Source: Octopus sinensis
Lineage: Eukaryota
Assembly (NCBI RefSeq): GCF_006345805.1
Contig: NC_043000.1
Span: 106,640,001 to 106,704,000 of the forward strand
Direction: 5' to 3'
DNA: 64,000 nucleotides
This document shows, in pieces, positions 8,133 through 43,928 of the stretch; the first letter of the stretch is position 1, and each line of letters begins with the position of its first letter. The position numbers and the translations under genes are program-made. A model generated the notes under the pieces. It saw only the letters and a list, made by a program, of their open reading frames with translations, ran no database searches and had not been told where the DNA came from.

Positions 8133-8972
8133 GTGGTATACACAGTGTGAATATCTGCACTTGGAAACTTAGTCTCCATAGGTCAGACTTAGACATCACC
8201 ATTTTTTTTTTGGGGGGGGGGGGGGAACTAGTTGATGCTGTTGCACGCAAATTCCTTCTTTCCACGCCATCCAGGCTGCTCATAGAATAGTCCATAGTGA
8301 TGTTATGGACGCTGCCGTCAGAATGCAAAGAGCTGGAACAGACACTACATGGTATTCACCTATGTAGACAGCTATGCACTCTAACAAGACTTAAATGCTG
8401 TATACGACTGGAAGAATGAGAATAAAATGTCTTTCAATGGCATGAAATCGGACTCACCGTTACGTAAAGGGGTCCTCCCACAACAAGTATGTAGCCGACT
8501 AATGATCATACACTGATCAGAACAGCTGTTAATGTTACATCCATGTATCCTACTGTTACATACAGCGATTTGAATTTTAGTTTCTCTAGATAGCCGTAGA
8601 ATTAGGGTACACTTGTGATGAAAGCCAATTATTCCGAAAAATATCCATAAGAAGGTTCCCGATAAGTTTGCATTATTTTTACCTCCAAAGCTAAATAACT
8701 ACACTTGTCTACAATATATAATGTTTCAGGCATTCTGTCTGTCTCTATCTTCCTACCCCTCAGTGTGTTTGTGTATGTGTGTATGTGTGTGTGTGTGTGT
8801 GGGGGTATGTATGTGTATGCATGTGCGTGTGCTTGTGGTACGTTTAGATAAATGTCGATAGGCAGATGTAGACAGAATAACTTCAAACGATCTTCGTTCC
8901 TAGGCGTTCATGTTAACACTTATAAAATTACATGTGTGTCAAAGAATTCTCAAAAAACTAAATAAGACTTAC

Positions 8973-9054
8973 GGAAACTACGTTTTCTACCAAACTTCAA
9001 ATCACAGTCGTCTGCTTTGAAAGTAATCACCAACGGCGTTCCATCGATTTCGAA
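8973..9054 (-). CDS. Gene A exon 3: FEIDGTPLVITFKADDCDLKFGRKRSF(+C)
   Basis: ttttcccaag acceptor and C|GTAAGT donor; 82 nt, phase 0 to 1; homologous to the start of gene B exon 3 (FEIDGTPLVITF identical). Confidence 0.9.
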
Positions 9055-28908: not shown

Positions 28909-29066
28909 TTATACGCCATGGATTTTGCCAGTTTCAATGTTCTTCTGAATTTCTTCGAGTACCAGTTTGGTAGCACACTGCACGGCGCTTTTCGGACTTG
29001 ACTTTACACAGTGACGTCTGGTTAGTGTAGTGATTTCAGTCACATCAGCTGGACATCTCACTTCAA
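28909..29066 (-). CDS. Gene B exon 4 (terminal): FEVRCPADVTEITTLTRRHCVKSSPKSAVQCATKLVLEEIQKNIETGKIHGV*
   Basis: actttcag acceptor, phase 1, TAA at 28911-28909; same length and Cys spacing as gene A exon 4. Confidence 0.85.
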
Positions 29067-30500: not shown

Positions 30501-31126
30501 TGTATAGGCTGGCATCTGTGGTTTAGCATACATACAGAATATATGTTCCCACCATATATTTATAGTCGTAAACCTTCGCTGCCATTCACAATTGAGCACG
30601 ACATGTTAACATGTATTATGGTTTCGCTAACTGTTTCTGTTGCCTATGTAATCACAAGGAGATTTACACACATTCTCGGCCCTTTCAACTTGACTCTAGA
30701 TGAGACAGTTCGATGAAGAGGGCTCTTCTCTACAATTGGTCTTATACTCATTTTCAGGTGAATTGACATGAGCAACGTGCAAATCAAAACGACTGTTAAT
30801 GTTATACTTTTGAAAGCTACTGTGATAGCGATTTCGATTCAAAGTTTTCTAGGTAGCCAACGAATCTTAGTACACTTCTGAAGAGGGCCAATCATTCCGA
30901 AACATATCCATAAGAAGATTCCCAGTACTTTTCCCTGCTTGCTTTAGAAAAGCAGGTAGGTTTTAATATCTTTTTTAAACGCTAAAGCTAAGGCAATTGA
31001 GTACGACATATATTTCAGGTATTCTGAATTAGCTTGTATTCTGGGTGTCAATCTGTTTCTCTCTCTCCCTCTGTGTGTGTGCGTGTCAGTGCATGTCAGT
31101 GTGTGTGTGCAAATCAGTGTTTGCGT

Positions 31127-31341: not shown

Positions 31342-32195
31342 AAATAAGACTTACATGGACTTCGTTTTCCAATAATCTCCGAATAAGACTTAGATGGACT
31401 TCGTTTTCCAAAAATCTCCGAATAAGACTTAGATGGACTTCGTTTTCCAATATCTCCGAATAAGACTTAGATGACTTCGTTTTCCAATAATCTCGAATAA
31501 GACTTAGATGGACTTCGTTTTCCAATAATCTCCGAATAAGACTTAGATGGACTTCGTTTTCCAATAATCTCCGAATAAGACTTAGATGGACTTCGTTTTC
31601 CAATAATCTCCGAATAAGACTTAGATGGACTTCGTTTTCCATAATCTCCGAATAAGACTTAGATGGACTTCGTTTTCCAATAATCTCCGAATAAGACTTA
31701 GATGGACTTCGTTTTCCAATAATCTCCGAATAAGACTTAGATGGACTTCGTTTTCCAATAATCTCCGAATAAGACTTAGATGGACTTCGTTTTCCAATAA
31801 TCTCCGAATAAGACTTAGATGGACTTCGTTTTCCAATAATCTCCGAATAAGACTTAGATGGACTTCGTTTTCCAATAATCTCCGAATAAGACTTAGATGG
31901 ACTTCGTTTTCCAATAATCTCCGAATAAGACTTAGATGGACTTCGTTTTCCAATAATCTCCGAATAAGACTTAGATGGACTTCGTTTTCCAATAATCTCC
32001 GAATAAGACTTAGATGGACTTCGTTTTCCAATAATCTCCGAATAAGACTTAGATGGACTTCGTTTTCCAATAATCTCCGAATAAGACTTAGATGGACTTC
32101 GTTTTCCAATAATCTCCGAATAAGACCTAGATGGACTTCGTTTTCCAATAATCTCCGAATAAGACCTAGATGGACTTCGTTTTCCAACAATCTTC
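31342..32195 (-). repeat. 39-bp tandem array, 22 copies (+ strand unit gaataagacttagatggacttcgttttccaataatctcc)
   Basis: Counted directly; near-identical units; four 1-nt deletions (copies at about 31420-31457, 31458-31494 with two, and 31612-31649). Confidence 0.97.
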
Positions 32196-32251
32196 GCTTC
32201 ACAGTTGTCTGCATAGAAGGTAATTACCAGCGGTGTTCCATCGATTTCAAA
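31355..32251 (-). CDS. Gene B exon 3, extended by 21 in-frame 39-bp repeats: FEIDGTPLVITFYADNCEAKIVGKRSP[S(K/R)SYSEIIGKRSP]x21
   Basis: ctatctaag acceptor at 32252-32253; the only GTAAGT donor lies in the last repeat copy (31354-31349); 897 nt as assembled, and 897+4 deleted nt = 901 = 82 (gene A exon 3 length) + 21x39. Confidence 0.75.
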
Positions 32252-33550
32252 CTTAGATAGAAAAAGTAAGGAAGATATGTTGAAAATTGTTACTGTATAC
32301 AAACTCATGCACTCATACACAGGTGCAAATACGGGCGTGCGCACAGACGCACGCACAGACGCACATACACACGCACAGACACACGCACAGACACACGCAC
32401 ACACACGCACAGACGCACATACAGACACAGACGCATACACATGCACAGACGCACACACACACACAGACGTGCGAACGTAAAGGTAACTTTGTAGCCAATA
32501 TGCCGGATATATCTAAGCATTTTTCTTTAAACGAAAATGACCTATTGCAAGGTTTTATATAGTACTATTTGTTTCAAAATATATTTGGATATATATATTT
32601 TTGTGGTGCTATGATATGTCTGAAGTTGTTCTTTTGTAGGTGTCTATGATGTGCTAAGCTTTTTTTTATCGATAATTTTATTTTTGTGATCGAAGAAAAT
32701 CACCTCTTTATGTTTTACTTAATATATTTTCGTGTAATTTCAAAATTGATATGCAATACATAAAAAGGAACAGACCCAAGAGAAATGGGTTTTATTACTG
32801 AAGAGGACTGGTACAGGATAATATAGCTTGTATTGTGGTTTGATACTCTGGAGGAAAGATAGTTAATGCGACGTAGTATCATCAATTGGAAGCATTGCAA
32901 AAGAAAATGCTGCGATTAAGACAGAATAAGCATTTGTTTTTCGTATTGAAATCAGAAAAGACTTTATTTTCAATCTCCTGTTACCACTAACAATTCCAGA
33001 CATATATATAGAGAGAGATACAACTCCTACAACATTTAAAATAAATACGACAGCCACACTAACGCACTTAGTAATCCGAATATATGAAAATTGGAACAGT
33101 TCTCTGGAAATGCATTTGAAAGTTCAAACAGTATCTAAGGCTAAGTCTTCCATACTGGATCTTTACATTCTATTGCTTGATCAATTGTTCTCTTCTGTAT
33201 AAAGTACAGAATTCAATCTTCTTGAATTCTGTACTTTATTCACATCATAATTATTTACCATCTCAACCTTTACCATTTCCTCAAATTTTATCTAATTACT
33301 TTTTGCTGTTACTATTCTTAGGTTAAAGAATAACAATAACAATAACAACAACAACAACAAATTCTTAACTTATATGAAGGACTAATTTTGTCGTTAGTAT
33401 CATGGTTGTATCAAGGTATAGATAAAATTTCAGTATTATTGTTGTAATGTATTACAGAATATGTCCATAAATTTATTAGTCAAAACTGTGTTACGATGAG
33501 TGTAAAGATCTTCACAATATGATCGTAGACAGATAGTTAGATCGAGAGAT

Positions 33551-34378: not shown

Positions 34379-34548
34379 CTTCCCACTTTCCGGGAAAAGG
34401 AGCAACTTGAGTTTGAAGAATTTTTCAAGTTTATTCCCAAGTCCATTCTCTAGAATTCCTTTTATTTTGGTAAGTGTTTGCTGTACATCAAAGCCTTCAC
34501 AGGGATCGAACTGGCAGTAGGCAGTGACCAACACAAGTAAAAAGACAA
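34379..34548 (-). CDS. Gene B exon 2: IVFLLVLVTAYCQFDPCEGFDVQQTLTKIKGILENGLGNKLEKFFKLKLLLFPESGK
   Basis: tttacag acceptor and AAG|GTATGT donor; 170 nt, and 13+170=183 gives phase 0; paralog of gene A exon 2. Confidence 0.9.
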
Positions 34549-38077: not shown

Positions 38078-40790
38078 TAGTGGTTCTCAAAGTGGGTTCT
38101 GTGAGCCCCCTAATTTTTGATGTGTGTATAAGGTGCGCTTATATAGGAGCTTGCACTCAGTGTGCACGCCTAGACGTGACCTTAGTTACTGTTGGCGTCG
38201 GCTGCGGCTTGCCAGAGCAAATACCTCAGGCTGTTGATCAATGTGCTTATACGTGCGTACCTGGGTTTGAAGGTGAGTGATTGCATGTTAACTGTCCAAT
38301 AGTTTTGCAAGCCTATTAAAGTTGAAAACGTTAATTAAAACATTAATCGAGACATTCTGCTCAGGCTCATATTGCTCCTTGTATAGACCGTTTGAATTTG
38401 AAAGGAGCAATTTTACTGCATTATAAGTAAGGTTTTTTGAATATATGTGGCATAACACGAAATATAATATGGCAAAATCAATCGATAATGTTATTTTATT
38501 GACTTTCAAATACTTATTTCCATTGAATAGGGTTTTTTTTATCTTTGCCTGGATTTAGTTCCCGAGCAATAACAATACTACATTTAAAAGTTATCAGAAT
38601 TCAGTTTTTGGACTCTATATCTACGTTTTCTGTCCTCAATGTGGCAGTGATTTCTTTTCTCACAAATTTTTTCTGATTTTCGTTCTATTTTTTGTAGTTA
38701 TCAACTTCCTACCATTACTTCAAGAAGCTCTAATAAAAGGCCGTTTACACGCAATTACCAACAAGAGCTTTTACTACTTGCTTTTTTTGCCTTCAAGTGA
38801 TAACTCGGATAAGCCTCGATGTATTGAATGTGGGTTGATAATGACAAATGAATCCATGAAGAAATCGAAGATCCTTAGACATCAGTAAGTACAGCATCCT
38901 GGTTCCGTAGGCAAAGAACGCAATTATTTTGAGAAGAAAGCCGAGCAACGACAGAAGAACAAACCACAACCACATCAGTTGTTTACGAAAAGAGCAAATG
39001 AAAAAACCAAAAATATACTTAAAGTGAGCTGCTTGGTAAGCCAATTGATCGCGAAAGCGGGTAAGCCACATACAATTGGTGAAAGTTTAGTGAAACCAGC
39101 TATGCAAGTGAACTCCTTGGACAAAACGCCGTAACCGTCTTACAAAAAGTCCCCCTTTCGATGATACTGTCAAGCACAGACAAGATGAGATGGCAGAAAA
39201 CCTCGACTAACAACTGGTTGAGGCACTAAGACTCTCGAAGTTATCTTTCCAAATCGACGAGACAACCATTAGGAACTCCTCAGTGCTATTGGCGTATGTT
39301 CGATGTGTTGAGGAAAAAAGATGCTGGAAGAAATGCTCTTCATGAAGAGACTGCCGGATACAAAAAGTGAAACTATTTGAAGATATCTGTTCACAGATAT
39401 CTTCAACAGAAAGGAATTCCTCTGGAAAACCTTTTTCAAATCGCGACAGATGGTGCTTGTGCGATGACCGGCGAACACAATGGTTGCACAGCAAAATTCA
39501 AAGAAGTTGCTCCGCACTTGTCCATTCATTGAATCATTCATCAGGAACATCTAGCTGCAAAATTCCTCGGTGGCGATATGGAGATGGCATTACAGGTTGC
39601 TGTTTCAGCTTTCACGACTGAATTTTTCACAAACTATTTTTCACAAACTATGCGAGGTTCGATGGCTTTCCAAAGGTGATTCCCTTCTTCGTCTAACTGA
39701 AATGTAGAGCATGGTTCTTTCCTTTGTCAACCTTATGAAATCACAAGCCTGCACAAAGAAACAGATGACCTATTTTCAGCCATGAGTGAAGATGACACAA
39801 AGGCTAAAATTTTCTATTTGGTTGATCTGTTTTTGCATGTCAACCAACTGAATAAAACCTTTGGCAGCTGCACCTTCAGAAGAGGGGTTCATGTTCTTTG
39901 GCAACTTAGCAAAGGCCTCTTCTTCCTCCGTTGTCATTGCAAACTGTACAAATCATTTGGAAAGCTTAAGAGAAGGTATCAATCGATGGTTTAAGGATGT
40001 CATCGAAATAAAACCCACTAAGTGGATTTCTGATGATGCTCATTTTGATGTTTTAAGGGAGGGTAGCATCGATACTATCATTGCCGCAGATTTGGTCGAA
40101 CTTAAAGAAAACAATATTTTGATGGGGAGACCCCAAAAAGAAGGATTGATGGTATGGTTGGAAGTGAAATCTTCATTTCCCGTCCTCTTAAAAAGGTGGT
40201 GCCCTTTCTTTAATGGTTTTCTACAACGTGTTTGATTGAAGCTGGATTTTCTGCATCAAATCATATTCCCACAACTAAAAGAAATGTACGACAAATTGAA
40301 AAGAGAGGTGATTTACAACTTAAGCTGAACCACGATATGAAGATATGTAAGGGGTCCGGTAATTGGTCGGTGGATTGGATAAAGTTTGGGTTAGTGGTCG
40401 GTGGGCGTGATTAGGGTTCGTCACCTCTAAAAAGGTTATAATCACTTACAAGAACAAGTAAATAAGAGTCCAGATAAATTGGTATAAATAGGTACGTTGG
40501 ACTACGCGAAAGAGGGGTTAAATTTGTTTCAAATCCGGGCCACCTGCAAGCTTTTGTAAAAATTCGAAATTTCTATAAAAGAGATAAAAATTTAACTCTT
40601 TAGGGACAGAAGGATTTATGCAGTATGCCGGATTTGTACGTCTTTCTCTACATTAATCTTTTCAAGGCAACACAAAATTAGCAACTTATATTAAATCAAT
40701 AGTGCTAATTAGGTCTTCATTCCAGTGGGCCCCGGAATTATTGGGGGTATGAAAAGTGGGTCCCGGACACAAAAAGTTTGAGAACAGCGG
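38078..40790 (+). mobile_element. hAT (Buster/Charlie) DNA transposon, degraded, in gene B intron 1
   Basis: Termini tagtggttctcaaa / tttgagaacagcgg; 8-bp TSD GGTTATAT at 38070-38077 and 40791-40798 (central TA); transposase motifs KAGKPHTIGESLVKP, QIDETT, ATDGACAMTG and IIHQEHL. Confidence 0.9.
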
Positions 40791-41826: not shown

Positions 41827-41839
41827 TAGAAAGTCTCAT
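41827..41839 (-). CDS. Gene B exon 1 (coding part, MRLS plus first base of I)
   Basis: ATG AGA CTT TCT A|GTAAGT; flanking intron and 5' sequence are homologous to gene A exon 1. Confidence 0.85.
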
Positions 41840-42231: not shown

Positions 42232-43928
42232 AGTGCTCCAGTACCGGAGAAGGAGGGAAGAAAGGACATTGACACAACAAACACCAGCACCAAAACAATG
42301 GAACTCCGTCGTAACAATTTCGCCTCAGCTGCGAAGCAGATCTCTGAGGAAATAAAAGTTACGATGGAGGAGATTAAAAATTCGAAGGTTTTGTTGAGAA
42401 AAGAGGGAAATAGTGTTTTCTTAAACACTCCCCAAGAGCTCATCAACGAAACAAAGAAAGACAATAATTTACAGAATTTTCGAAAGAAAACAAAAGAAAA
42501 ATCACAAATGCTACACCTCAACAACTCGAAATAGCTCTAAAGCCCATATGGGGGCAAAAGAGCTATGTGACAAAAGGCAAGCGGTATGGAACCGTGGAAG
42601 TGAGATTCCAACAGAGAAAGAGGCACGGAAGAATGCCATTTCGCCCTTGCAAACGGACAGTTTGTTACTCGTGCCAACGTATCTCGGTCAAAGAGTAATA
42701 AAAATCCGCATCGACCTTGTCCCGCCTGAACTCAATATTCCTTGGCTAGTGGCAGCTGTCCTCTATGACAAAGAGGACAACGCCACTATTCTCCAAGTCC
42801 ACAGGCATAGAGAAAAAAAACTGGTCAGGTATAGAAGTTCAACTGCTGGTACAAATCCAGCAGGAAAACATTAATGCCATACCTGACTCGGTAAATTTGC
42901 CGGACGGCACCAGGCTGCACGTTGCTGTGGAGGGGCGAAAGCCAAAATGTTACCTCTGCAGCAGCGAAAGCCACCTAAAAATGGACTGCCCCATTTACAA
43001 GAAAAGAATGGAGGCAGACGGCAAGAGGCAGCAGCAACAACAACAACAAAAGACAACAACAACAACAACAACAACAGAAACAACAAAAGCACGAAACACC
43101 AAAGGCTGCCACACCACCAACACCATCACCACCACCACGACGAACGACACCACCTCCAACAACCACAAAACCAACACCAACCCGAACACCAAGAAAGACA
43201 ACAAAAAAGGAAGAAAAATCACCGACACCGTCACCATCACCAACAGATACAGCAACACCACCGCTACCAGCAGAACCAACAATTTTTCGCCCTGCTGCTG
43301 AAGCGGACCCGACAACCATCCCCTTTCCGGATCAGGACAGCTCGGATTGTGCGAGCACTGATACCGAGAGAGGTGAATGGCACACAGTGCCTCCGAAGAA
43401 GAAGAGGAGGAAGAAGCAAAAAGACACACAGGGGAAGCACAAACAAATAGTGCTTCCCAACAACAACAACACGCACTCACAACAGCAAACAACAACACCT
43501 TCGACACCACTACTGCCACTTCCCCACACACCAACACACACAGACTCGATTACAGCCATAAACACAAAAAATGAAAAACTCGTTTCATATATAAAAGACA
43601 ACACAAGTACAAACATTACAGATTTTATAATACCTACACACAACACACCACCAGCACACATTCTCACCATTAAAATTAACCAAAAGACATACAGTGACAT
43701 AAAAGAGAAATTCCCTAACGACGTCGGATCGCTAGGGAGAAGTTTCTCTAAGAAACTTTATAAAAACATTGTGGAAACACCCGTGCAAAAGCACAAGGGA
43801 GCCACTCCTACCACCACCAACAACAGTAAGTAGAGCCTTTTTCTACTTTTTTTCTGTCACCTTTTGAAACATGGCAAACTTAGAATCGGTTGCTTGAATG
43901 TGAGAGGCCCTGGGTCACCTTGGAAACA
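42232..43928 (+). mobile_element. L1/Tx1-type LINE 5' portion: ORF1 with CCHC knuckle and the first codons of ORF2, 3'-truncated
   Basis: KCYLCSSESHLKMDC; ORF2 start MANLRIGCLNVRG at 43871. Confidence 0.8.

What the first reader, a model, noticed from the sequence alone, without database searches (positions are those of the whole stretch)
31355..32190. Candidate newly born polyprotein precursor releasing about 21 amidated decapeptides (SPSKSYSEII-NH2)
In frame, the array reads ...G-KR-SPS(K/R)SYSEII-G-KR... within a signal-peptide-bearing protein. KR is the standard prohormone-convertase site, and a preceding Gly is the PAM amidation donor. After correcting the indels the predicted products are 18 x SPSKSYSEII-NH2, 2 x SPSRSYSEII-NH2 and 1 x SPSKSYSEIF-NH2. 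I know no peptide with this C-terminus. It may show a multi-copy neuropeptide/venom-type precursor arising inside a defence-protein scaffold. Alternatively, if uncleaved, each unit adds net +2 charge, giving a long polycationic loop.
Basis: partly seen in the sequence, partly recalled or inferred. Interest (0 to 1): 0.88.

Follow-up and report, generated by a model that had tools for sequence, protein, structure and literature searches.

The report
Young peptide-repeat array in octopus gene
A secreted-protein gene of the common-octopus species pair has recently amplified a 39-base piece of its own exon/intron boundary, copying an ancient protein-cutting signal 10 to 21 times, so it may be a peptide-hormone-like precursor caught just after its birth, although neither expression nor cutting has been shown.

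Summary
Window 31355-32190 (minus strand) holds 21 full units and one partial 39-bp unit reading G-KR-SPS(K/R)SYSEII.

The array lies in exon 3 of a four-exon gene ("gene A") for a ~140-aa secreted protein. The window is Octopus sinensis (100% match to CM016862.1).

The unit is 37/39 identical to the contiguous exon 3/intron 3 junction of the paralogue A'. The donor G+1 is changed to C, so only the last unit keeps GTAAGT. "SKSYS" is therefore former intron sequence.

The O. vulgaris orthologue carries 10 units, all in frame, and is annotated as a 270-aa protein. A', gene B, and the O. bimaculoides and Argonauta homologues carry a single copy.

In this assembly four 1-nt deletions break the frame after unit 13. 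They are probably assembly errors, because another tandem repeat in this window is dense with 1-nt indels.

G-(R)KR is ancestral. K-R is invariant, and a Gly directly precedes the basic cluster, in 13 homologues from chitons, gastropods and cephalopods. This fits a conserved convertase/amidation site.

The polyprotein reading is plausible, and the array may simply excise itself. Expression, cleavage and bioactivity are untested. The "defence-protein scaffold" has no support from Pfam, PDB sequences or fold search.

The parts
41827..41839 (-). Gene A exon 1 (ATGAGACTTTCTA, encoding MRLS + 1 nt), followed by a GTAAGT donor
   Evidence: Pattern search and identity with exon 1 of the annotated paralogue in L001. 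Exact boundaries.
34379..34548 (-). Gene A exon 2: rest of the signal peptide plus the N-terminal helical part (IVFLLVLVTAYCQFDPCEGFDV...FPESGK). Acceptor ...TTTACAG|, donor |GTATGT, ends in phase 0
   Evidence: 99.4% identical to exon 2 of O. vulgaris P0005.
32186..32251 (-). Gene A exon 3, ancestral single-copy part (FEIDGTPLVITFYADNCEAKIV), acceptor ...TCTATCTAAG|
   Evidence: 100% identical to O. vulgaris L004 14613-14678.
31371..32185 (-). 21 full 39-bp units (GGAAAACGAAGTCCAT CTAAGTCTTATTCGG AGATTATT). Each encodes GKR-SP-SKSYS-EII, and the former donor GT is CT in every unit
   Evidence: The rotated unit is 37/39 identical to the contiguous exon 3/intron 3 junction of A'.
31641..31678 (-). 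Unit 14, 38 nt (ATTATT shortened to ATTAT): the first frameshift
31449..31523 (-). Unit 18 (38 nt, CGGAG shortened to CGAG) and unit 19 (37 nt, GTCCAT to GTCAT and GATTATT to GATATT): three more 1-nt deletions
31355..31370 (-). The original last 16 nt of exon 3 (GGAAAACGAAGTCCAT, encoding GKRSP + 1 nt), forming the 22nd partial unit
31349..31354 (-). The only intact splice donor (GTAAGT) of exon 3. It is followed by the ancestral intron sequence CTTATTTGGTTTATTGCG
   Evidence: It is the best-scoring donor in the region (5.3 bits on a rough PWM, against -4.9 or lower for every GT inside the array).
28909..29066 (-). Gene A exon 4 (FEVRCPADVTEITTLTRRHCVKSSPKSAVQCATKLVLEEIQKNIETGKIHGV*), acceptor ...CAACTTTCAG|. 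The ORF is intact but is read out of frame (LK*) as assembled
8973..9054 (-). Paralogue gene B exon 3 (FEIDGTPLVITFKADDCDLKFGRKRSF) with a single-copy junction ...TTTCC|GTAAGTCTTATTTAG. This is the comparator showing the ancestral state
   Evidence: The gene B CDS (exons 15825-15813, 13399-13227, 9054-8973, 6207-6050) begins exactly as the 141-aa protein of LOC115210761.

Best explanation
What it is. This is a young coding minisatellite inside exon 3 of a four-exon gene for a small secreted protein. The protein belongs to an uncharacterised family found across molluscs.

How it arose.
- A 39-bp segment was tandemly duplicated. It comprised the last 24 nt of exon 3 (...EII-GKR-SP) and the first 15 nt of intron 3.
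- In the copy that was then amplified, the splice-donor G had become C.
- Splicing can therefore occur only at the last unit, which still has GTAAGT. Every internal unit is translated as 13 in-frame residues: SP (exon), SKSYS (former intron) and EII-GKR (exon).

What it does to the protein.
- Each unit re-creates the family's invariant Gly-(Arg)-Lys-Arg motif.
- In the predicted fold this motif sits in a loop between two beta-strands, flanked by invariant cysteines.
- The most likely reading is that the motif is a proprotein-convertase site, with Gly as amide donor, in all family members.
- If so, the array is cut out of the pro-protein as 10 (O. vulgaris) to 21 (O. sinensis) decapeptides, trimmed and amidated to SPSKSYSEII-NH2. 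What remains is the same two-part protein that relatives make.
- That would explain why a fast-expanding insertion is tolerated, and it supplies free multi-copy peptides on which selection could act.

Shown: the array, its origin from the junction, loss of the donor, in-frame status and annotation in O. vulgaris, the copy-number difference, absence from paralogues and outgroups, and conservation of G-(R)KR.

Inferred: inclusion in mRNA, cleavage, amidation and tolerance by self-excision.

Unknown: the tissue of expression and any activity of the peptide.
For: - Array and units.
- Origin from the junction: the rotated unit AGATTATTGGAAAACGAAGTCCAT|CTAAGTCTTATTCGG is 37/39 identical to the contiguous junction in A' of both species. 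The two differences are donor G+1 to C and intron +12 T to C.
- Splicing: the last unit's GTAAGT is the only strong donor.
- Gene model: canonical splice sites and intact exons 1, 2 and 4. Restoring the indels gives an in-frame 413-aa protein.
- Orthologue: O. vulgaris P0005 (CAI9721111.1) is 270 aa with 10 in-frame units and an intact C-terminus. Its DNA array has 10 units of exactly 39 nt with different private substitutions.
- Species and orthology: the window is O. sinensis (100% identity over 25,825 nt) and is 98.6% identical to the O. vulgaris locus.
- Single-copy junction elsewhere: A' in O. sinensis and O. vulgaris, gene B and O. bimaculoides; single copy in the Argonauta protein.
- Family conservation: of only 13 invariant columns among 13 sequences (chiton, gastropods, cephalopods), two are K85 and R86 and four are Cys. 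A Gly directly precedes the basic cluster in all 13 sequences.
- Basic-site processing elsewhere in the family: the chiton member has three whole domains joined by KPKR|Q, and the gastropod members carry KR|Q just after the signal region.
- Structure: in the AlphaFold model (pLDDT 72.8) IIGKRSPF is the loop between strands 79-81 and 90-99.
- The indels are probably artefacts: another tandem repeat in the same window shows about 27 one-nt indels per kb, against 3.4 per kb in unique sequence.
Against: - As assembled, four 1-nt deletions break the frame after unit 13. The product would be 362 aa and would lose the Cys-bearing C-terminal part.
- No O. sinensis protein model for gene A turned up in either search of the 5.8-billion-cluster database.
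- No transcript-derived sequence with the array was found. The O. vulgaris model is an EVM consensus that may rest on ab initio prediction.
- Cleavage at G-KR has not been shown for any family member.
- Pro at P2' (KR|SP) is not an ideal convertase context (general knowledge).
- All four substitutions seen among units are non-synonymous, which gives no sign of purifying selection on the peptide, although the counts are tiny.
- The non-repeat CDS evolves fast (pN/pS 0.56-0.85 against A').
Confidence: 0.55

Rival explanations
1. Neutral coding VNTR that stays in the protein. The array is translated but not cleaved, and forms a long, disordered, Ser/Lys-rich loop with net +2 charge per unit between two beta-strands. 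G-KR is conserved in the family for a structural or binding reason, not for processing.
For: Copy number differs freely between the sister species (10 against 21) and the units carry private non-synonymous variants, as expected of a drifting minisatellite. The unit net charge is +2. The motif lies in a loop of the model, where insertions are tolerable. There is no direct evidence of cleavage for any member.
Against: K-R is as invariant as the four core cysteines across more than three molluscan classes, while the neighbouring residues vary, and a Gly always abuts the basic cluster even where the register shifts (G-KR against G-RKR). That pattern is typical of processing/amidation sites. The chiton member is a three-domain polyprotein joined by KPKR|Q. 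A 130-273-residue insert between two adjacent strands of a 120-residue domain would be hard to tolerate unless it is removed.
Confidence: 0.22
2. Decaying duplicate. After the A/A' duplication, gene A became redundant. The array is a slippage-prone lesion, and in O. sinensis the frameshifts are real, so this allele is a pseudogene or encodes a truncated product.
For: There are four frameshifting deletions as assembled. No O. sinensis protein model for gene A is in the database. Evolution against A' is relaxed or fast (pN/pS 0.56-0.85). In unique sequence the window does not lack bases more often than the O. vulgaris assembly does.
Against: The O. vulgaris orthologue is fully in frame and is annotated. 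Exons 1, 2 and 4 and all splice sites are intact in O. sinensis, and differ from O. vulgaris by only 2 synonymous and 2 non-synonymous changes. All four lesions are 1-nt homopolymer contractions clustered in the array. Another tandem repeat in the same window shows about 27 one-nt indels per kb with an indel:substitution ratio near 1:1, the signature of unpolished long-read consensus.
Confidence: 0.25
3. The array is not part of any mature mRNA. The gene is silent, or exon 3 is skipped or spliced differently, and the O. vulgaris 270-aa protein is only an ab initio artefact.
For: No transcript-derived protein containing the array was found. The annotation pipeline mixes ab initio calls with evidence. 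An internal exon of 468-897 nt would be unusually long.
Against: The ancestral donor is destroyed (CT) in every internal unit, and no other GT that joins exon 3 to exon 4 in frame scores above -2 bits. Any productive mRNA must therefore include the array. The period is a multiple of 3, the array is stop-free, and it keeps exon 4 in frame in O. vulgaris.
Confidence: 0.15

Closest known systems
Multi-copy amidated neuropeptide precursors of molluscs (for example the FMRFamide-type precursor; general knowledge)
   Same: Signal peptide; many near-identical short peptides in tandem; each followed by Gly-Lys-Arg, the canonical convertase cleavage, carboxypeptidase trimming and PAM amidation signal; copy number varies between species.
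   Different: Here the repeats sit inside a folded, Cys-containing domain of an older protein family rather than in a dedicated precursor. The peptide has no relative. The array is only as old as the O. vulgaris/O. sinensis lineage. Expression in neurons or glands, processing and a receptor are all unknown.
Notothenioid antifreeze glycoprotein polyprotein gene, born from a trypsinogen-like protease gene (Chen, DeVries & Cheng 1997, as summarised in PMC6410882)
   Same: [quoted passage not shown] The parent gene supplied the signal peptide. The product is cleaved post-translationally into many copies.
   Different: In AFGP the unit is 9 nt at an intron-exon (acceptor) junction, the parent protein body was lost, and function and selection are proven. 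Here the unit is 39 nt at an exon-intron (donor) junction with an inactivated donor, the parent protein is retained on both sides, the cleavage signal is inherited from the parent, and no function is shown.
Two-chain pro-proteins cleaved within a disulfide-bridged connecting segment (insulin-type C-peptide logic; general knowledge)
   Same: The basic sites flank an excisable middle segment. Invariant cysteines lie on both sides of the site (1 on the N side and 3 on the C side in the family core), which would keep the chains linked after cleavage.
   Different: There is no sequence or fold relationship. The disulfide pattern is inferred from conservation and a predicted model only.
Coding minisatellites / VNTRs (general knowledge)
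   Same: Head-to-tail units of tens of bp, at least 98% identical, with copy number and private variants differing between close lineages.
   Different: The unit carries a complete proteolytic processing signal and a disabled splice donor, so expansion changes the number of releasable peptides rather than only the length of a linker.

Membership tests
Multi-copy amidated peptide (prohormone-type) precursor | N-terminal signal peptide | tested here: met
   MRLSIVFLLVLVTAYC has a basic n-region, an 8-residue hydrophobic core and small residues at -3/-1. It is conserved across the family. This was judged by inspection; no SignalP run was possible.
Multi-copy amidated peptide (prohormone-type) precursor | Tandem peptide copies each bounded by dibasic (KR) sites | tested here: met
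   21 units in the window (13 in frame as assembled) and 10 in-frame units in O. vulgaris P0005.
Multi-copy amidated peptide (prohormone-type) precursor | Gly immediately before the basic site (amide donor) | tested here: met
   EII-G-KR is present in every unit. A Gly precedes the basic cluster in all 13 family members.
Multi-copy amidated peptide (prohormone-type) precursor | Transcribed, with the repeats in the mature mRNA, in cells that have a regulated secretory pathway (PC1/3, PC2, CPE, PAM) | not testable with these tools
   No RNA-seq or read access. The only support is the EVM gene model P0005 and the splice-site logic.
Multi-copy amidated peptide (prohormone-type) precursor | Mature peptide detected; bioactivity or receptor known | not testable with these tools
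   No literature hit for the peptide or for any family identifier.
Mollusc-wide secreted G-(R)KR protein family (uncharacterised; P0001-P0016) | About 140-150 aa; signal peptide; invariant G60, T67, C78, K85, R86, C93, A95, V97, E99, C108, A116, C119, A120 | tested here: met
   The collapsed gene A product aligns at 90% identity to P0001 and keeps all invariant columns. The profile search recovers only molluscan members at E below 1e-5.
Coding minisatellite / VNTR | Tandem units of 10-100 bp, high identity, copy-number variation between close lineages | tested here: met
   39-bp period, 98% matches, 21 copies against 10, with different private variants.
Known defence-protein scaffold (AMP, BPI/LBP, lipocalin and the like) | Sequence or fold similarity to a characterised defence family | tested here: not met
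   Pfam: no hit (one E = 0.19 chance match). PDB profile search: nothing below E = 0.7. Foldseek against PDB: best E = 0.1, TM at most 0.37, no lipocalin. An automatic UniRef name 'Lipocalin/cytosolic fatty-acid binding domain-containing' on P0020 is not borne out.
Unitary pseudogene | Frame-disrupting lesions that are real and fixed | tested here: inconclusive
   Four 1-nt deletions as assembled. However, the orthologue is intact, the other exons are intact, and tandem repeats in this assembly are dense with 1-nt indels.

The most novel reading that the evidence does not exclude
SPSKSYSEII-NH2 is a genuinely new bioactive secreted peptide (a neuropeptide, pheromone, or salivary or skin-gland peptide) that arose only within the O. 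vulgaris/O. sinensis lineage. Half of it comes from former intron sequence. It was born by amplifying a splice junction that happened to carry an ancient convertase/amidation site, and its copy number is now expanding under selection. This would be a neuropeptide-type counterpart of the antifreeze-glycoprotein story.
Probability: 0.12. Interest if true: 0.9.

Novelty: new variant of a known kind. Interest (0 to 1): 0.64.

Why it matters
How multi-copy peptide precursors originate is usually reconstructed from ancient, eroded genes. Here every intermediate is still readable:
- the single-copy parent junction, in a paralogue about 7% diverged and in outgroups;
- the disabling donor mutation;
- the ex-intronic codons;
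- two sister species with 10 and 21 copies.

The finding also flags an uncharacterised, mollusc-wide family of secreted proteins. Its most conserved non-cysteine feature is a Gly-(Arg)-Lys-Arg site, which suggests an unrecognised processed (possibly amidated, two-chain) molluscan factor.

If the peptides are made, the locus offers a directly testable case of partial de novo birth of a secreted peptide. If they are not, it remains a clean example of exonisation through splice-junction duplication, and of how annotation pipelines drop genes because of indel noise in repeats.

Tried and rejected
- Early exon guesses were wrong. I first guessed gene B's exon 1 as ATGAAGT|GT and took a conserved block (A 30932-30870 / B 8669-8607, 'KSTGNLLMDMFRNDW') for the last exon. 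Database homologues showed the true exons 1 and 4, so that block is intronic.
- Species call corrected. I first took the window for O. vulgaris because gene B resembled P0004. The 100% match to O. sinensis CM016862.1 corrected this.
- Orthology corrected. I first took O. sinensis L001 (P0001) for the orthologue of gene A. It is the orthologue of the second locus A' (97% to L005 against 92% to L004). 'Absent in O. sinensis' therefore became 'absent in paralogue A''.
- Missed hit. The first homologue search missed P0005 although it is nearly identical to the query. A second, composite query found it.
- Low-confidence model. The structure predicted from a 4-sequence alignment was unusable (pLDDT 37). 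The 12-sequence alignment gave pLDDT 72.8.
- Searches with no result. The PDB sequence search, Foldseek and five literature searches for the family, the identifiers and the mechanism returned nothing relevant.
- Chance matches set aside. A bacterial 3157-aa hit (P0012) and an ENA repeat protein (P0007) were judged to be chance or low-complexity matches.
- Not attempted. Testing selection on the repeat units, because 4 substitutions are too few.

Full report
OBSERVATION. The window is eukaryotic: about 35% GC, with many microsatellites and transposon debris. TRF reports a 39-bp-period array at 31343-32193 with 21.9 copies, 98% matches and score 1639. On the minus strand it resolves into 21 full units (32185-31371) and a 22nd partial unit (31370-31355). 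Units 3-13, 15-17 and 21 are identical to the consensus GGAAAACGAAGTCCATCTAAGTCTTATTCGGAGATTATT. Units 1-2 carry AAG to AGG (K to R) and unit 20 carries ATT to TTT (I to F). Unit 14 lacks one T, unit 18 lacks one G, and unit 19 lacks one C and one T. In the frame entering from upstream the array reads ...AKIV-GKR-SPSRSYSEII-GKR-SPSRSYSEII-GKR-SPSKSYSEII-... for 13 units. It then shifts into a second stop-free frame (LLENEVHLSLIRR).

GENE MODEL AND SPECIES. A database search with the neighbouring open exons found a small family of uncharacterised secreted Octopus proteins of about 140 aa. Mapping them onto the window gave two paralogous four-exon genes on the minus strand.
- Gene A: exon 1 41839-41827, exon 2 34548-34379, exon 3 32251-31355 (897 nt, containing the array), exon 4 29066-28909.
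- Gene B: 15825-15813, 13399-13227, 9054-8973, 6207-6050.
All splice sites are canonical. A locus fetched through gene B's protein matches window 25825-1 at 100.000% with no gaps. The window is therefore Octopus sinensis, assembly GCA_006345805.1, chromosome CM016862.1, near 106.6 Mb.

ORIGIN OF THE UNIT. In gene B, exon 3 ends ...GRKRSF|GTAAGTCTTATTTAG, a single copy. The same single-copy junction...AGATT(A/G)TTGGAAAACGAAGTCCAT|GTAAGTCTTATTTGGTTTATTGCG, is found in three other places: a second O. sinensis locus (L001, protein P0001), its O. vulgaris orthologue (L005), and the O. bimaculoides homologue (L002). Rotated, the array unit AGATTATTGGAAAACGAAGTCCAT|CTAAGTCTTATTCGG is 37/39 identical to that contiguous stretch. 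The only differences are G to C at donor position +1 and T to C at intron position +12. The unit is thus 24 nt of exon end plus 15 nt of intron start. In the peptide, SP and EII-GKR are exonic, whereas SKSYS is translated from former intron sequence. The first unit keeps the original exon sequence on its 5' side, and the last unit keeps GTAAGT and the original intron on its 3' side, as expected for in-place tandem amplification. With a rough donor matrix (values from memory), the last unit's CAT|GTAAGT scores 5.3 bits. Every GT inside the array scores -4.9 or lower, and no GT that joins exon 4 in frame scores above -2. Any productive mRNA must therefore include the array.

THE ORTHOLOGUE SETTLES THE FRAME QUESTION. 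A second, composite search recovered P0005 (O. vulgaris CAI9721111.1 / A0AA36ARS0, 270 aa). It is gene A with ten in-frame units: 8 x SPSKSYSEII, 1 x SPSKSYSEIV and 1 x SPSESYSEII. These are followed by the intact C-terminal part SPFEVRCPADV...GKIHGV. Its locus (L004) lies directly upstream of the O. vulgaris gene B locus, as in the window, and is 98.6% identical to the window over 10.3 kb. Its array has ten units of exactly 39 nt plus the terminal partial unit with GTAAGT. The array therefore predates the O. sinensis/O. vulgaris split. It differs in copy number (21 against 10) and in private substitutions, and it is in frame in at least one species. The paralogous locus A' is about 7% diverged from A, whereas the two species differ by about 1.5-3%. 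The A/A' duplication is therefore older than the species split, and the array arose in A after that duplication.

ARE THE FOUR DELETIONS REAL? As assembled, the mRNA would encode 362 aa, reading exon 4 out of frame (...EVHLK*). With the bases restored it encodes 413 aa ending in the native C-terminus. No reads are available here, so the evidence is indirect.
- Points towards artefact: all four lesions shorten 2-nt homopolymers and cluster in units 14-19. Exons 1, 2 and 4 are intact and differ from O. vulgaris by 2 synonymous and 2 non-synonymous changes.
- Assembly noise: the about 1.1-kb tandem copies at 15.9-20.5 kb of the same window differ from each other by 96 one-nt gaps against 101 mismatches in 3.5 kb (about 27 per kb). 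Unique sequence compared with O. vulgaris shows 3.4 per kb and a substitution:indel ratio of 4.5:1. Tandem repeats in this assembly are therefore indel-noisy.
- Estimate: I put the probability that the array's deletions are assembly errors at about 0.7. They would also explain why no O. sinensis protein model for gene A turned up in the database searches.

THE G-KR MOTIF IS ANCIENT. A profile search of 1.8 billion representative proteins showed that the family is mollusc-wide: Liolophura (chiton), Haliotis and Patella (gastropods), several Octopus paralogues and Argonauta. All members are unnamed. In a 13-sequence alignment with 44% mean column identity, only 13 columns are invariant: four Cys, K85-R86 and seven others. 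A Gly directly precedes the basic cluster in every sequence, whether the site is G-KR or G-RKR. The gastropod and chiton members also carry KR|Q just after the signal region. The chiton protein is three complete domains joined by KPKR|Q, which is hard to read as anything but a polyprotein. With 12 sequences, AlphaFold gives a usable model (pLDDT 72.8, core 81-90) built of N-terminal helices, a five-strand sheet and a long C-terminal helix. IIGKRSPF forms the loop between strands 79-81 and 90-99. The core cysteines are split one before and three after the site, so cleaved chains could stay disulfide-linked (inference). Pfam, PDB sequence search and Foldseek found no related family or fold.

MECHANISM PROPOSED. 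Established knowledge is that Gly-Lys-Arg in a secretory protein is the substrate for three successive steps: convertase cleavage, carboxypeptidase E-type trimming and PAM amidation. The conservation pattern suggests this happens at the single site of every family member. In gene A each repeat unit regenerates that site in the same local context (EIIGKR|SP against the parental KIVGKR|SP). The array would then be excised as decapeptides (SPSKSYSEII-NH2, M 1108.576, net charge about +1), and the flanking chains would be the same as in relatives. Such a 'self-excising' insertion would be nearly neutral for the parent protein. That explains its tolerance and rapid copy-number change, and it yields 10-21 copies of a new peptide per molecule. 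Nothing here shows that the gene is transcribed, that the site is cut, or that the peptide does anything. The O. vulgaris model comes from an EVM pipeline that mixes Iso-Seq, RNA-seq, protein alignments and ab initio evidence (PMC10700109).

COMPARISON WITH WHAT IS KNOWN. Architecturally the predicted product resembles molluscan multi-copy amidated peptide precursors. The sequence-level criteria are met: signal peptide, repeated KR-bounded copies and a Gly amide donor. The biological criteria (expression, detected peptide, receptor) could not be tested. Evolutionarily the nearest precedent is the notothenioid antifreeze glycoprotein gene. [quoted passage not shown] The octopus case differs in four ways:
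- it uses the donor-side junction, with an inactivated donor;
- it keeps the parent protein on both sides;
- it inherits its cleavage signal from the parent;
- it has no demonstrated function.
No paper mentions the peptide, the family identifiers or this mechanism in a peptide precursor.

VERDICT. The array is a real, young, lineage-specific, exon-resident repeat that multiplies an ancient processing motif. Whether it is a functioning peptide precursor, a self-cleaning neutral VNTR or, in O. sinensis, a broken allele needs reads, RNA and mass spectrometry. I classify it as a new variant of a known kind and score interest at 0.64.

Noticed in passing
window 15900-20500: About four tandem copies of a ~1.1-kb intergenic segment between genes A and B. 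The copies differ by about as many 1-nt gaps as mismatches (96 against 101 in 3.5 kb), which suggests unpolished long-read consensus in tandem repeats. O. vulgaris has two cleaner copies.
   Followed up: partly
window 38150-40345: hAT-like transposase remnants (ORFs on both strands) inserted in intron 1 of gene A. The insertion is present in the O. vulgaris orthologue (continuous 98.6% alignment) but absent from the paralogous A' locus (L001 4489-4556).
   Followed up: partly
window 30870-30932 and 8607-8669; L001 11991-12131: A block of about 140 nt inside intron 3 is conserved at about 73% between genes A, B and A'. I first mistook it for an exon. It could be a regulatory element or an alternative exon.
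   Followed up: partly
window 24000-26300 (minus strand): LINE-like endonuclease/reverse-transcriptase ORF fragments lie downstream of gene A. The segmental duplication shared with the A' locus extends through 28521-26701, where the A' locus (L001 15832 onwards) carries the start of a TPR-repeat gene.
   Followed up: no
window 42500-43850 (plus strand): A gag-like ORF with a CCHC zinc knuckle (CYLCSSESHLKMDCP) embedded in low-complexity T/N/Q-rich sequence, probably a retroelement remnant just upstream of gene A's exon 1.
   Followed up: no
P0009 (Liolophura sinensis XP_064596543.1): The chiton member of the family is a 420-aa protein made of three near-identical full domains joined by KPKR|Q. 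This is a whole-domain polyprotein, independent of the octopus peptide array.
   Followed up: partly
L005 5001-28957 (O. vulgaris, P0006 / CAI9721795.1): The annotated model for locus A' in O. vulgaris looks chimeric: an unrelated 94-aa N-terminus joined to exon 4 over 24 kb. Yet intact exons 1-4 encoding a normal 141-aa protein are present. That protein has Tyr at the otherwise invariant Cys21.
   Followed up: partly
P0020 (O. bimaculoides XP_014772383.1): UniRef names this family member 'Lipocalin/cytosolic fatty-acid binding domain-containing protein'. Neither Pfam nor the fold search supports a lipocalin relationship.
   Followed up: yes
P0012 (Bacteroidetes MAG OIQ28571.1, 3157 aa) and P0007 (ENA, 278 aa): The bacterial giant protein gives seven weak matches to profile positions 57-116 (E = 5e-5). 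The ENA repeat protein shares 'KSYSEIL'. Both look like chance or repeat-driven matches.
   Followed up: no
window 31621-32260, both strands: The array is stop-free in two of the three minus-strand frames and in at least one plus-strand frame (a 211-aa ATG-initiated ORF at 31625-32260). ORF finders will therefore report spurious long ORFs here.
   Followed up: yes
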